The notes under the pieces were generated by a model. The model was not told the DNA's origin and did not search any database. It was given only the letters and a program-made list of their open reading frames with translations. A DNA stretch of 63,962 nt, the filler included, from Olpidium bornovanus S191 (lineage: Eukaryota; Fungi; Olpidiomycota), in the NCBI GenBank assembly GCA_017911155.1. It is 31 parts of 31 records of this genome, joined end to end, with 100 filler letters (N's around TTAATTAATTAA, not from the genome) between each part and the next. Parts side by side here need not be neighbours in the genome. Positions count along the whole stretch, not along the records: positions 30,105 to 31,936 come from JAEFCI010002993.1; 30 more parts are not named here. The stretch is one strand, 5' to 3'. Shown here piece after piece: positions 30,105-31,936 of the stretch. Every line of letters begins with the position of its first letter. The first letter of the stretch is position 1. A program made the translations under genes and the position numbers.

Positions 30105-30459
30105 CCCCCCCCCCTGACTGCCCCCGCACCCCCCCGCACCCCCCCGCACCCCACCGCACGCAAGAACTCGGAGCCCCGCGTGGTAACCGCGCGGGAAGGG
30201 ACCGGACGCACCGCGTCGACGGACGCGACGTCGAAGGACGGCTTTGCCGTCGACTTGCCTTCTGCTCGACGTCGGCGAACATAAATAGCGTCCCTCCCGC
30301 TCCGTAACTCGATTTCGAACCCAACCTTACCTTAACTTTACCGACCAAACTTTTACCTTCCCCTTTCGACTGCACTGGCAGCCCTCGTCACCTTACCTGT
30401 AGCTCCTTGCACAGACCTGACGTGGGAGAGGAATAGACGTTTAACCTTGCCGCAGTACA
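30105..30459 (+). mobile_element. LTR-like interspersed repeat family B, copy 1 (ends ...CCGCAGTACA)
   Basis: Its reverse complement matches 43817-44150. Homology stops sharply at TGTACTGCGG in both copies. Contains ATAAATA. Confidence 0.75.
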
Positions 30460-31119
30460 GTTGTCGTCTCCAGAAACTGCAGTTCGGGAAAACGTGGGAA
30501 ATCGTCTGGAAGCTTGAGCATGTTCCTCCCTGACCTCAGCCTTTTCCCCCGAGACCGCAGCTCGTGAGGACATGGAGGGCGTCGTAGAGGTGGCTCTTGG
30601 ACTCATTGGGGCACAGCGGAGGGCTCGGCGGAGGGCGCAGCAGAGGGCGCAGCGGAGGGCGCAGCGGAGGGCGCGCAGGGGGCGCAGCGGGGGGGCGCAG
30701 CGGAGGGCGCGGCGGAGGGCGCAGCGGAGGGCGCGGCGGAGGGCGCAGCGGAGGGCGCGGCGGAGGGCGCGGCGGAGGGCGCAGCGGAGATGCGCGCAGC
30801 GGAGGGCGCGCAGCAGAGGGCGCAGCGGAGATGCGCGCAGCGAAGGGCGCGCAGCAGAGGGCGCAGCGGAGGGCGCGCAGCAGAGGGCGCAGCGGAGATG
30901 CGCGCAGCGGAGGGCGCGCAGCAGAGGGCGCAGCGGAGGGCGCGGCGGAGATGCGCGCAGCGGAGGGCGCGCAGCAGAGGGACGGCGCGGTTACAGGCAG
31001 GGCGTCCTTGGGCTCATAACCTGTCGCGTTTTGTTTTCCCTTTTATTTCGTTTTGGGGTGCGGCGTGGGAAGTAAAAGTAAAAAGGAGGAGGGGAGCGCG
31101 AACGAAACAAATTGTAACA
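30460..31119 (-). mobile_element. Nested short-LTR element: 98-bp LTR (31119-31022), PBS GGTTATGAGCCC (31021-31010), GC-rich tandem array, possible gag start
   Basis: On the minus strand: TGTTACAA...AATAAAA...GCGACA followed directly by GGTTATGAGCCC. It interrupts the Copia integrase just before SLWVEAW. Confidence 0.7.
30613..30980. repeat. GC-rich degenerate tandem repeat built from ~9-12-nt units (GCGGAGGGCGC / GCAGCAGAGG / GCGGAGATGCGC)
   Basis: Directly visible reiteration over about 370 bp. Confidence 0.9.
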
Positions 31120-31936
31120 CCTCTCTCTGGGTTGAAGCATGGCGCACTGTGGTATACGTGTACAACCGCGTACTGCATTCACACCACGGTAAAGTCCAGC
31201 TCGAAATCTTGATGCCGCAGATGCCACCGATCATGCTCGCGCACATGCGCGTATTTGGCTGTGTGGCATTTGCGCACTTGACGAAGGACGAGCGGGCGCA
31301 CAAATCATTGCCTACGTCGGAGAAAGTGATCTATGCTGGATACGGCTCCACCACGGGCATCTATCGCTTTTGGCGGCCCGTCGCCAATGAAATGCTAGAG
31401 CGCCGCAACGCTGTTTTCCATGAAGACTGTCGCTATGATCTCTCGGAGTTCAACTTTGCCAAGAAAGAGCAAACCGTCGGCGCCGATGGTGACATCTCTG
31501 ATGAAACCTCTTACGAAGTCCAGCGGATCCTCTGGCACCGTATCAACGACGACAGTGACCCTGAGTCTCGGATTCGCTGGAAGGGCTTCAACTCTTCGCA
31601 CGACACTTGGGACCCACTAGACAATCTTGACGGCTGCTTGCCGAAGCTTCACGCTTGGCACAAGGCACGTCGTCATCCACTTCCTGCATGGTTATCTCCC
31701 TTGTCGGAACCGATAACCTTTGTTGGTGAGGAGCACTCAGCGTGCCCACGGTACGACCTCAAGCCCCGCACCTATCAAGAGGCAATCTCTCGCCCCGATG
31801 GACCACGTTGGGATGCCATGATGCGGAAGGAGCTCGTTTTCCTCGCGGAGAATGGCATCTTTCGCCTCATCCCGCGTCCCGAGACGACATTGAAAGCCAG
31901 ATGGGTTTTCAAGTTGAAGCTGAATCCCGACCTCAG
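31120..31936 (+). mobile_element. Ty1/Copia pol fragment: integrase C-terminus + chromodomain + start of reverse transcriptase, one open frame
   Basis: SLWVEAWRTVVYVYNR...HMRVFGCVAFAH...YAGY...YRFW...NAVFHE (Copia integrase tail); YEVQRILWHR...RWKGF...DTWDPLDNL (chromodomain, 31512-31664); KPRTYQEA...RWDAMMRKEL..LAENG.FRLIPRP...ARWVFKLK (Copia RT start). Confidence 0.92.

What the first reader, a model, noticed from the sequence alone, without database searches (positions are those of the whole stretch)
31120..31936. Ty1/Copia retrotransposon carrying a chromodomain between integrase and RT
Seen: one stop-free frame with Copia order (integrase tail HMRVFGC...GY...YRFW...VFHE, then RT start PRTYQEA...WDAM..EL...RWVFK). 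In the normally unstructured linker between them lies YEVQRILWHRINDDSDPESRIRWKGFNSSHDTWDPLDNLDGCLPKLHAWH (31512-31664), a chromodomain with aromatic residues at the three cage positions (Y, W, F). Known: integrase-linked chromodomains define Ty3/Gypsy chromoviruses and help target heterochromatin; I am not aware of an established Copia lineage with one, but cannot check the literature. Inference: an independent chromodomain capture placed at the integrase C-terminus after polyprotein processing, i.e. a chromo-Copia lineage that may read H3K9me.
Basis: partly seen in the sequence, partly recalled or inferred. Interest (0 to 1): 0.88.

Follow-up and report, generated by a model that had tools for sequence, protein, structure and literature searches.

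The report
Copia retrotransposon fragment carrying a chromodomain
This is a dead, front-truncated copy of a Copia-type jumping gene whose integrase ends in a real chromodomain (a reader of methylated histones); the design is genuine and shared by a diverse family, but it was already described in diatom Copia elements in 2009.

Summary
One stop-free frame (31122-31936, +) reads Copia integrase tail (Pfam SH3_retrovirus, E 5e-18), then a chromodomain at 31512-31664 (Pfam Chromo, E 2e-11, 44 bits against a cut-off of 25), then the lead-in to the reverse transcriptase. The chromodomain has aromatic residues at all three cage positions. Its model superposes on H3K9me3 and H3K27me3 readers at about 1 A.

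It is not a one-off. At least 14 of the 150 best cluster representatives in a 1.84-billion-protein library, from four independent sources, have the same order. Two are from the fungus Olpidium bornovanus. The chromodomain is as conserved as the flanking enzyme parts; the linkers are not.

The novelty claim fails. Ty1/Copia elements with a chromodomain at the integrase C-terminus (CoDi-A/CoDi-I, diatoms) were described by Llorens et al. 2009 and cited again in 2017. Whether this family belongs to that lineage or is a separate capture could not be tested, because no CoDi sequence was available.

This copy is a relic. Gag, protease and the integrase core are absent, and a GC-rich 12-bp minisatellite lies upstream.

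Tethering of integration to methylated histone H3 is inferred by analogy with Ty3/Gypsy chromoviruses, not shown. Verdict: new member of a known kind, moderate interest.

The parts
30105..30608 (.). Flank upstream of the element fragment. It is non-coding as far as can be seen, with no remnant of gag, protease or integrase core in any frame.
   Evidence: Six-frame translation; tblastn with the N-terminal parts of seven full-length relatives gives nothing better than E 0.4 here; no tRNA.
30121..30159 (.). C-rich 10-bp tandem repeat (3.9 copies) at the piece edge.
   Evidence: Tandem Repeats Finder; partly complementary to the G-rich minisatellite (pair I1).
30609..30981 (.). GC-rich 12-bp minisatellite: 28.5 copies, 82% G+C, with a higher-order period of about 53 bp. 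It lies 140 nt upstream of the truncated element.
31122..31936 (+). Fragment of a Ty1/Copia-type pol gene, running from the integrase C-terminal region through a chromodomain to the start of the RT. It is broken once, by 5' truncation. There are no stops and no frameshifts in the 271 visible codons. The 3' end is cut by the edge of the piece.
31236..31433 (+). Integrase C-terminal SH3-like barrel (Pfam PF25597 SH3_retrovirus).
   Evidence: E 5.3e-18, 65 bits; model pLDDT 80-89 with five strands.
31437..31508 (+). Linker 1: poorly conserved, acidic at its end, predicted disordered.
   Evidence: pLDDT below 50; mean identity to relatives 10%.
31512..31664 (+). Chromodomain (PF00385) with aromatic cage residues Y131, W153 and F156 (numbered in the 31122 frame).
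31668..31763 (+). Linker 2 between the chromodomain and the RT. It opens with a short proline-containing motif shared by most relatives and is otherwise variable and predicted disordered. It is a candidate location of the integrase/RT protease cleavage site (inference).
31764..31934 (+). N-terminal lead-in of the Copia reverse transcriptase. In relatives it runs directly into PF07727 RVT_2.
   Evidence: Alignment A1 (27-49% identity); RVT_2 present in relatives; no direct Pfam hit in the window.

Best explanation
The piece holds a dead, 5'-truncated copy of a Ty1/Copia-type LTR retrotransposon. It belongs to a diverse lineage whose Gag-Pol polyprotein has a canonical chromodomain inserted between the integrase C-terminal SH3-like domain and the reverse transcriptase.

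Shown here:
- the domain order;
- the chromodomain fold and intact aromatic cage;
- the same module at the same position in many divergent relatives, conserved as strongly as the enzyme parts around it.

Inferred:
- there it binds nucleosomes carrying methylated histone H3. H3K9me2/3 is most likely, because the nearest solved relatives are Clr4, CDYL, Chp1 and HP1. H3K27me3 is not excluded;
- this steers new insertions into silent chromatin, as reported for Ty3/Gypsy chromoviruses.

The design is the one already described for diatom CoDi-A/CoDi-I Copia elements. This copy can do nothing itself, because it lacks gag, protease and the integrase catalytic core.
For: - **Domains in the window:** Pfam SH3_retrovirus and Chromo are both well above their curated cut-offs.
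- **Similarity to solved chromodomains:** the sequence matches methyl-lysine-reading chromodomains in PDB, with the cage columns aligned. The model has pLDDT 85-91 over the domain. Foldseek matches H3K9me3- and H3K27me3-bound chromodomains at rmsd about 1 A.
- **Relatives:** 4406 hits in the representative library. Of the best 150, 14 have the order integrase tail, chromodomain, RT. Eleven of the 14 were scanned with Pfam: ten are confirmed and one (P0011) has no Chromo hit. Full-length members read gag, Pol_BBD, gag_pre-integrs, rve, SH3_retrovirus, Chromo, RVT_2.
- **Independent sources:** NCBI (Olpidium bornovanus), JGI, ENA and Logan. This excludes an assembly chimera.
- **Conservation:** mean identity to the query is 35% for the integrase tail, 36% for the chromodomain and 39% for the RT start, against 10% and 20% for the two linkers. 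The cage is kept in 11 of 13 sequences.
- **Truncation:** no upstream pol or gag remnant in the piece. The closest relative has the integrase core directly upstream.
- **Literature:** a chromodomain on a Copia integrase is described in PMC2774666 and PMC5348765. Targeting by chromovirus chromodomains is cited (Gao et al. 2008).
Against: - No binding or insertion-site data exist for any member.
- The integrase/RT cleavage site is unknown, so the chromodomain could end up on the RT.
- The source organism of the piece is unknown. No near-identical copy was found in the protein word search or in the metagenome, genome and viral contig scans, so copy number and genomic distribution cannot be judged.
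- The RT part is identified only through relatives.
- One member of the closest clade (P0016) lacks the chromodomain. One has lost all three cage aromatics and one carries a deletion inside the domain. The module is therefore dispensable for at least some copies.
Confidence: 0.78

Rival explanations
1. Separate origin: this family, linked to the fungus Olpidium, captured its chromodomain independently of the diatom CoDi-A/CoDi-I elements and of Gypsy chromoviruses. Copia elements may even have gained the module several times.
For: - The only named relatives are from a fungus, Olpidium bornovanus, not a diatom.
- With the chromodomain left out, the flanking integrase and RT stretches put the chromodomain-bearing members into at least three separate groups among ordinary Copia elements. 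The chromodomains' mutual best hits follow the same three groups.
- P0016, in the query's own group, has the same gag and pol but no chromodomain.
- No paper found mentions Copia chromodomains in fungi. The 2011 fungal survey reports chromodomains only in Gypsy elements.
Against: - No CoDi sequence could be obtained for comparison.
- The tree rests on 156 columns, with 49-75% bootstrap support for the query's group, so the separate groups may simply be unresolved.
- Most relatives come from unnamed samples that could be stramenopiles.
- Even if true, the architecture and the proposed mechanism are already known.
Confidence: 0.4
2. Same lineage: the fragment belongs to the already described CoDi-A/CoDi-I clade or its wider, older radiation. 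On this view there was one ancient capture, and the fungal copies reflect a broad or horizontally spread distribution.
For: The module, its position and its superfamily are identical to the published description. The chromodomain is positionally homologous across all members aligned here.
Against: There is no direct comparison. CoDi-I was described as diatom-specific. The named hosts here are fungal.
Confidence: 0.3
3. The chromodomain does not tether the integrase to methylated histones. After processing it belongs to the RT, or it acts as a protein, RNA or DNA contact module, as proposed for chromovirus chromodomains that lack cage residues.
For: The cleavage site is unknown. Linker 2 is as disordered as linker 1, so either could hold it. 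Some members have lost cage residues.
Against: The cage is aromatic at all three positions in the query and in 11 of 13 members. The nearest solved relatives are all methyl-lysine readers. In yeast Ty1 and Ty5 the targeting determinants lie at the integrase C-terminus, the same position (own knowledge, not tested here).
Confidence: 0.15
4. Artefact: an assembly chimera, or a single accidental insertion of a host chromodomain exon into one dead copy.
For: The piece is short, the copy is truncated, and no reads were available.
Against: The same junctions occur in at least 14 divergent proteins from four independent data sources, several of them long open gag-pol frames. The chromodomain has diverged in step with its flanks.
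Confidence: 0.02

Closest known systems
CoDi-A (Llorens et al. 2009), also called CoDi-I (Maumus et al. 2009): Ty1/Copia elements of diatoms
   Same: [quoted passage not shown]
   Different: They are described only from Phaeodactylum and Thalassiosira. Here the named relatives are from the fungus Olpidium bornovanus, and the closest relative is only 40% identical. Relatedness by pol phylogeny could not be tested because no CoDi sequences were available.
Ty3/Gypsy chromoviruses (for example MAGGY and the Tcn1-like elements)
   Same: A chromodomain fused to the integrase C-terminus. The presumed role is to direct integration to heterochromatin through methylated H3 (Gao et al. 2008, as cited).
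   Different: They belong to a different superfamily, with the order RT, RNase H, integrase and an RVT_1-type RT, so the chromodomain is the C-terminus of the whole polyprotein. Their integrase tail carries the GPY/F or Tf2-1-type SH3 module (PF24626 in hits P0165, P0168 and P0169). Here it is PF25597.
Chronos Ty3/Gypsy elements of oomycetes (Ustyantsev et al. 2017)
   Same: Another documented case of an LTR retrotransposon integrase gaining a chromodomain convergently.
   Different: Gypsy superfamily; they also carry an archaeal-type RNase H; they are restricted to oomycetes.
Ty5 and Ty1 integrase C-terminal targeting domains (yeast Copia elements)
   Same: The targeting determinant sits at the integrase C-terminus of a Copia element and tethers the integration complex to a chromatin or transcription factor (own knowledge; not tested here).
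   Different: These are short peptide motifs that bind Sir4 or RNA polymerase III subunits. They are not a folded histone-mark reader.
CopiaMBD elements of arthropods (de Mendoza et al. 2019, PMC6673714)
   Same: A Copia family that captured a host reader of a repressive chromatin mark, proposed to guide insertion into silent repeats.
   Different: The captured module is a methyl-CpG-binding domain, not a chromodomain. The family is restricted to arthropods.

Membership tests
Ty1/Copia (Pseudoviridae) LTR retrotransposon | pol order with the integrase upstream of the RT, in one frame | tested here: met
   Integrase tail (PF25597), then the RT lead-in, in one open frame.
Ty1/Copia (Pseudoviridae) LTR retrotransposon | Copia-type RT (PF07727 RVT_2) | tested here: inconclusive
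   No Pfam hit in the window, because only about 28 residues of the profile region lie inside the piece. All relatives aligned through this stretch carry RVT_2 at E 1e-43 to 1e-72.
Ty1/Copia (Pseudoviridae) LTR retrotransposon | gag, protease and integrase catalytic core present | tested here: not met
   Absent from the piece in all six frames, so the copy is truncated. They are present in full-length relatives and directly upstream in the closest relative.
Ty1/Copia (Pseudoviridae) LTR retrotransposon | LTRs, primer-binding site, polypurine tract | tested here: not met
   No long direct repeats other than the minisatellite, and no tRNA-related site, in the 1.8-kb piece. The 3' part lies outside the piece. 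One relative contig (L004) has identical 127-nt ends.
Chromodomain (PF00385), methyl-lysine-reading type | Profile match above the curated threshold | tested here: met
   44.1 bits against 25.1, E 2e-11.
Chromodomain (PF00385), methyl-lysine-reading type | Three-stranded sheet packed against a C-terminal helix | tested here: met
   Strands at residues 133-141, 147-153 and 162-165, helix at 166-182, pLDDT 85-91. Foldseek TM 0.8-0.94 and rmsd 0.8-1.0 A to HP1, Chp1, Rhino, MPP8 and CDYL2.
Chromodomain (PF00385), methyl-lysine-reading type | Three aromatic cage residues | tested here: met
   Y131, W153 and F156 align with the cage columns of Clr4 and CDYL. The cage is kept in 11 of 13 family members.
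Chromodomain (PF00385), methyl-lysine-reading type | Binding of a methylated histone tail | not testable with these tools
   No experimental data exist for any member.
CoDi-A / CoDi-I chromodomain-bearing Copia elements | Chromodomain at the integrase C-terminus of a Copia element | tested here: met
   compared with the description in PMC2774666.
CoDi-A / CoDi-I chromodomain-bearing Copia elements | RT/pol phylogenetic placement with CoDi1-4 and CoDi7 | not testable with these tools
   No CoDi sequences could be retrieved. The supplements hold images only, and the word-indexed protein search returned no diatom member.
CoDi-A / CoDi-I chromodomain-bearing Copia elements | Diatom host | tested here: inconclusive
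   The source of the window is unknown. The named relatives are from Olpidium bornovanus, a fungus. All others come from unnamed samples.
Ty3/Gypsy chromoviruses | Gypsy pol order (RT, RNase H, integrase) with an RVT_1-type RT and the GPY/F module | tested here: not met
   The integrase precedes the RT. The relatives have RVT_2 and PF25597, not RVT_1 or PF24626.

The most novel reading that the evidence does not exclude
The fragment represents a Copia clade of early-diverging fungi that gained a canonical H3K9me-type chromodomain independently of diatom CoDi-A and of Gypsy chromoviruses. The module may have been gained or lost repeatedly within Copia: there are three sequence groups and one chromodomain-less close relative. 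That would make integrase-chromodomain fusion a recurrently convergent solution for insertion into silent chromatin.
Probability: 0.4. Interest if true: 0.55.

Novelty: new member of a known kind. Interest (0 to 1): 0.35.

Why it matters
Integrase-linked chromodomains are the textbook hallmark of Ty3/Gypsy chromoviruses, and the Copia counterpart is known from a single, rarely cited diatom clade. This finding shows that the Copia version is not a diatom curiosity. It is a diverse set of families, some with long open gag-pol frames, and it reaches at least one early-diverging fungus.

If a proper pol phylogeny shows separate origins, it adds another case of convergent capture of a repressive-mark reader by retrotransposons, alongside chromoviruses, Chronos and CopiaMBD. 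It would also give annotators a reason to stop using 'chromodomain' as a Gypsy-only classifier. The window copy itself is an inert relic of no functional consequence.

Tried and rejected
- **Word-indexed protein searches.** The search with the window protein found nothing. Searches with alignments A1 and A2 returned mainly host chromodomain proteins or ordinary plant Copia elements and no further named chromo-Copia members. They were of no use for taxonomy.
- **Contig scans.** Scans of metagenome, prokaryotic-genome and viral contigs for close copies found none. The alignment was too divergent to be used for such a scan.
- **CoDi-A/CoDi-I sequences.** Attempts to get them from paper supplements failed: no CoDi term in the text held for one paper, and images only for the other two.
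- **Sequencing run SRR10938843.** It holds the three closest full-length relatives, but a literature search did not identify it. The Olpidium contig is only about 69% identical to the contigs from that run, so they could not be equated.
- **High-scoring multi-chromodomain hits.** Hits with 3-7 chromodomains and no integrase or RT match appear to be host proteins; the one cluster with named members includes an Aedes aegypti protein. They rank high only because several domains add up, so they were rejected as relatives.
- **First distance tree.** It gave invalid distances and was discarded. It was redone with capped Poisson distances.
- **NCBIfam.** No hit, as expected for a prokaryote-oriented library.
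- **An intron instead of a truncation.** Rejected, because no upstream coding remnant exists in any frame.

Full report
**What is in the piece.** The usable sequence runs from 30105 to 31936 (1832 nt, 62% G+C). A frame that opens at 31053 stays free of stops to the piece edge. Similarity to retrotransposon polyproteins starts at about 31107-31125. From there the frame reads, in order:
- the last helix of an integrase core and the Copia-type integrase C-terminal SH3-like barrel (Pfam PF25597, 31236-31433, E 5.3e-18);
- a 24-residue, poorly conserved acidic linker;
- a chromodomain (PF00385, 31512-31664, E 2e-11, 44.1 bits against a curated cut-off of 25.1; alone E 7.8e-13);
- a second variable linker;
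- 57 residues that in relatives lead straight into the Copia reverse transcriptase.

**The chromodomain is canonical.** Against PDB sequences the best matches are Clr4 (E 4.7e-09), CDYL, Chp1, HP1/CBX5, CDYL2, Rhino and MPP8. An AlphaFold2 model built on alignment A1 gives pLDDT 85-91 over residues 130-190. It has three strands and a C-terminal helix. The SH3-like barrel scores 80-89 and both linkers fall below 50. Foldseek against PDB returns only chromodomains at the top, many solved with H3K9me3 or H3K27me3 peptides, at TM (target) 0.8-0.94 and rmsd 0.8-1.0 A over 52-57 columns.

**It is a lineage, not an accident.** The word-indexed search found no close relative. An exhaustive HMMER scan of 1.84 billion cluster representatives gave 4406 hits at E <= 1e-3. 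Among the best 150:
- 14 have a chromodomain between the integrase tail and the RT start. Ten are confirmed by Pfam: P0001, P0002, P0003, P0004, P0007, P0008, P0010, P0013, and P0069 and P0080. Pfam on P0036 shows SH3_retrovirus followed by Chromo.
- The rest are ordinary Copia elements, or proteins with several chromodomains and no integrase or RT match that rank high only by summed domains. The one cluster of these with named members includes an Aedes aegypti protein.

Full-length members read gag, Pol_BBD, gag_pre-integrs, rve, SH3_retrovirus, Chromo, RVT_2 in a single frame of 1457-1701 residues. Each of these proteins represents a cluster at 50% identity, so the family is old and diverse. 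The closest, P0001, is only 40% identical to the window.

The members come from NCBI, JGI, ENA and Logan assemblies. This rules out a chimeric contig. Two carry an organism name, both Olpidium bornovanus S191, an early-diverging zoosporic fungus (genome paper PMC7865070). Three divergent families (P0001, P0003, P0004) come from one unidentified run, SRR10938843.

**The module is under constraint.** In alignment A1 the chromodomain sits at the same position in all 13 sequences. Mean identity to the window by region is:

| Region | Mean identity to the window |
|---|---|
| Integrase tail | 35% |
| Linker 1 | 10% |
| Chromodomain | 36% |
| Linker 2 | 20% |
| RT start | 39% |

The three cage positions are aromatic in 11 of 13 sequences, and the core tryptophan is kept in all 13. 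P0011 has lost all three cage aromatics, and one Olpidium copy carries a deletion inside the domain.

With the chromodomain excluded, a distance tree of integrase tail plus RT start (117 proteins, 156 columns) groups the window with P0001, P0002, P0003, P0004 and P0007, plus one chromodomain-less element, P0016. Bootstrap support is 49% strict and 75% relaxed. P0107 with P0080, and P0008, fall elsewhere. The chromodomains' mutual best hits follow the same three groups. This fits either several gains or losses, or an unresolved short alignment. I cannot tell which.

**State of this copy.** Nothing upstream of about 31107 resembles gag, protease, the integrase zinc-binding domain or the catalytic core in any frame. 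In the closest relative, those parts lie immediately upstream. The pol gene here is therefore broken once, by 5' truncation. There are no stops or frameshifts in its 271 visible codons, and its 3' part lies beyond the piece. Upstream there are 140 nt of unremarkable sequence, then a 373-nt G-rich 12-bp minisatellite (28.5 copies, 82% G+C). A C-rich decamer repeat lies at the far edge. No LTR, primer-binding site or tRNA-like feature is visible. The copy is a relic.

**How it most likely works.**

Shown: the architecture, the fold, the cage and the family-wide conservation.

Inferred: the protease cuts in linker 2, leaving the chromodomain as the C-terminal module of the integrase. There it binds methylated H3 tails (H3K9me2/3 most likely, H3K27me3 not excluded) and biases insertion toward silent chromatin. 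The basis is the analogy with Ty3/Gypsy chromoviruses, for which the papers read here cite Gao et al. 2008. From my own knowledge, the integrase C-terminus is also where Ty1 and Ty5 carry their targeting determinants.

I put about 0.95 on the identity of the parts and about 0.6 on the tethering mechanism.

**Comparison with what is known.** The literature held here does:
- Llorens et al. [quoted passage not shown]
- Maumus et al. 2009 define the same elements as CoDi-I (PMC2806351).
- Ustyantsev et al. 2017 list chromoviruses, CoDi-I and their new oomycete Chronos elements as the chromodomain-bearing LTR retrotransposons (PMC5348765).

The architecture and the mechanistic idea are therefore not new. 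What appears unreported in the searchable literature is its presence in fungi and its breadth. A fungal LTR survey mentions chromodomains only for Gypsy elements (PMC3248453), and targeted searches found nothing. Whether the family belongs to CoDi-A could not be tested, because no CoDi sequence was retrievable.

**Verdict.**
- Observation: confirmed.
- Interpretation: partly supported. The lineage is real, the novelty claim is refuted by prior description, and independent origin remains open.
- Novelty: new member of a known kind.
- Interest: 0.35.
- Most novel surviving reading: an independent fungal capture, probability about 0.4.

Noticed in passing
window 30609-30981: G-rich 12-bp minisatellite: 28.5 copies, 82% G+C, higher-order period about 53 bp. 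It lies 140 nt upstream of the truncated element. Whether it has anything to do with the truncation is unknown.
   Followed up: partly
window 30121-30159: C-rich 10-bp tandem repeat (3.9 copies) at the very edge of the piece. It is partly complementary to the G-rich minisatellite about 540 nt away.
   Followed up: no
relatives P0002, P0003, P0004, P0008, P0011, P0016: The gag of these Copia-order elements matches Pfam PF03732, and in three of them also PF19259. Both families are named after Ty3/Gypsy-type capsids. The usual Copia gag families are not matched; only P0069 gives a weak PF14223 hit. This may be a marker for the lineage.
   Followed up: partly
L001, L003, L005 (Logan run SRR10938843) and L006 (SRR10938823): One unidentified sequencing run holds three divergent chromodomain-bearing Copia families. 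Two of them have long open gag-pol frames of 1600 and 1701 residues. This suggests several co-existing and possibly recently active families in one host or community.
   Followed up: partly
relatives P0011 and P0017 (Olpidium bornovanus, L002): P0011 has non-cage residues at all three cage positions (no aromatic at two, tyrosine in place of the tryptophan). The Olpidium copy P0017 has a deletion inside the chromodomain. P0016, in the query's own group, has no chromodomain at all. The module is therefore lost or degraded in some members.
   Followed up: partly
alignment A1, directly after the chromodomain helix (window about 31668-31690): A short proline-containing motif is shared by about 7 of 11 members that cover this stretch, inside an otherwise variable linker. 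Its function is unknown; it could be a processing site or a docking site.
   Followed up: no
L004 1-127 and 4976-5102 (JGI 3300055048): Identical 127-nt sequences at both ends of the contig that carries the full-length relative P0008. The most likely cause is overlap of the two LTRs in the assembly.
   Followed up: no
L001 (closest relative): The integrase zinc-binding and core domains are called as a separate gene just upstream of P0001. The closest relative's pol is therefore interrupted once.
   Followed up: partly
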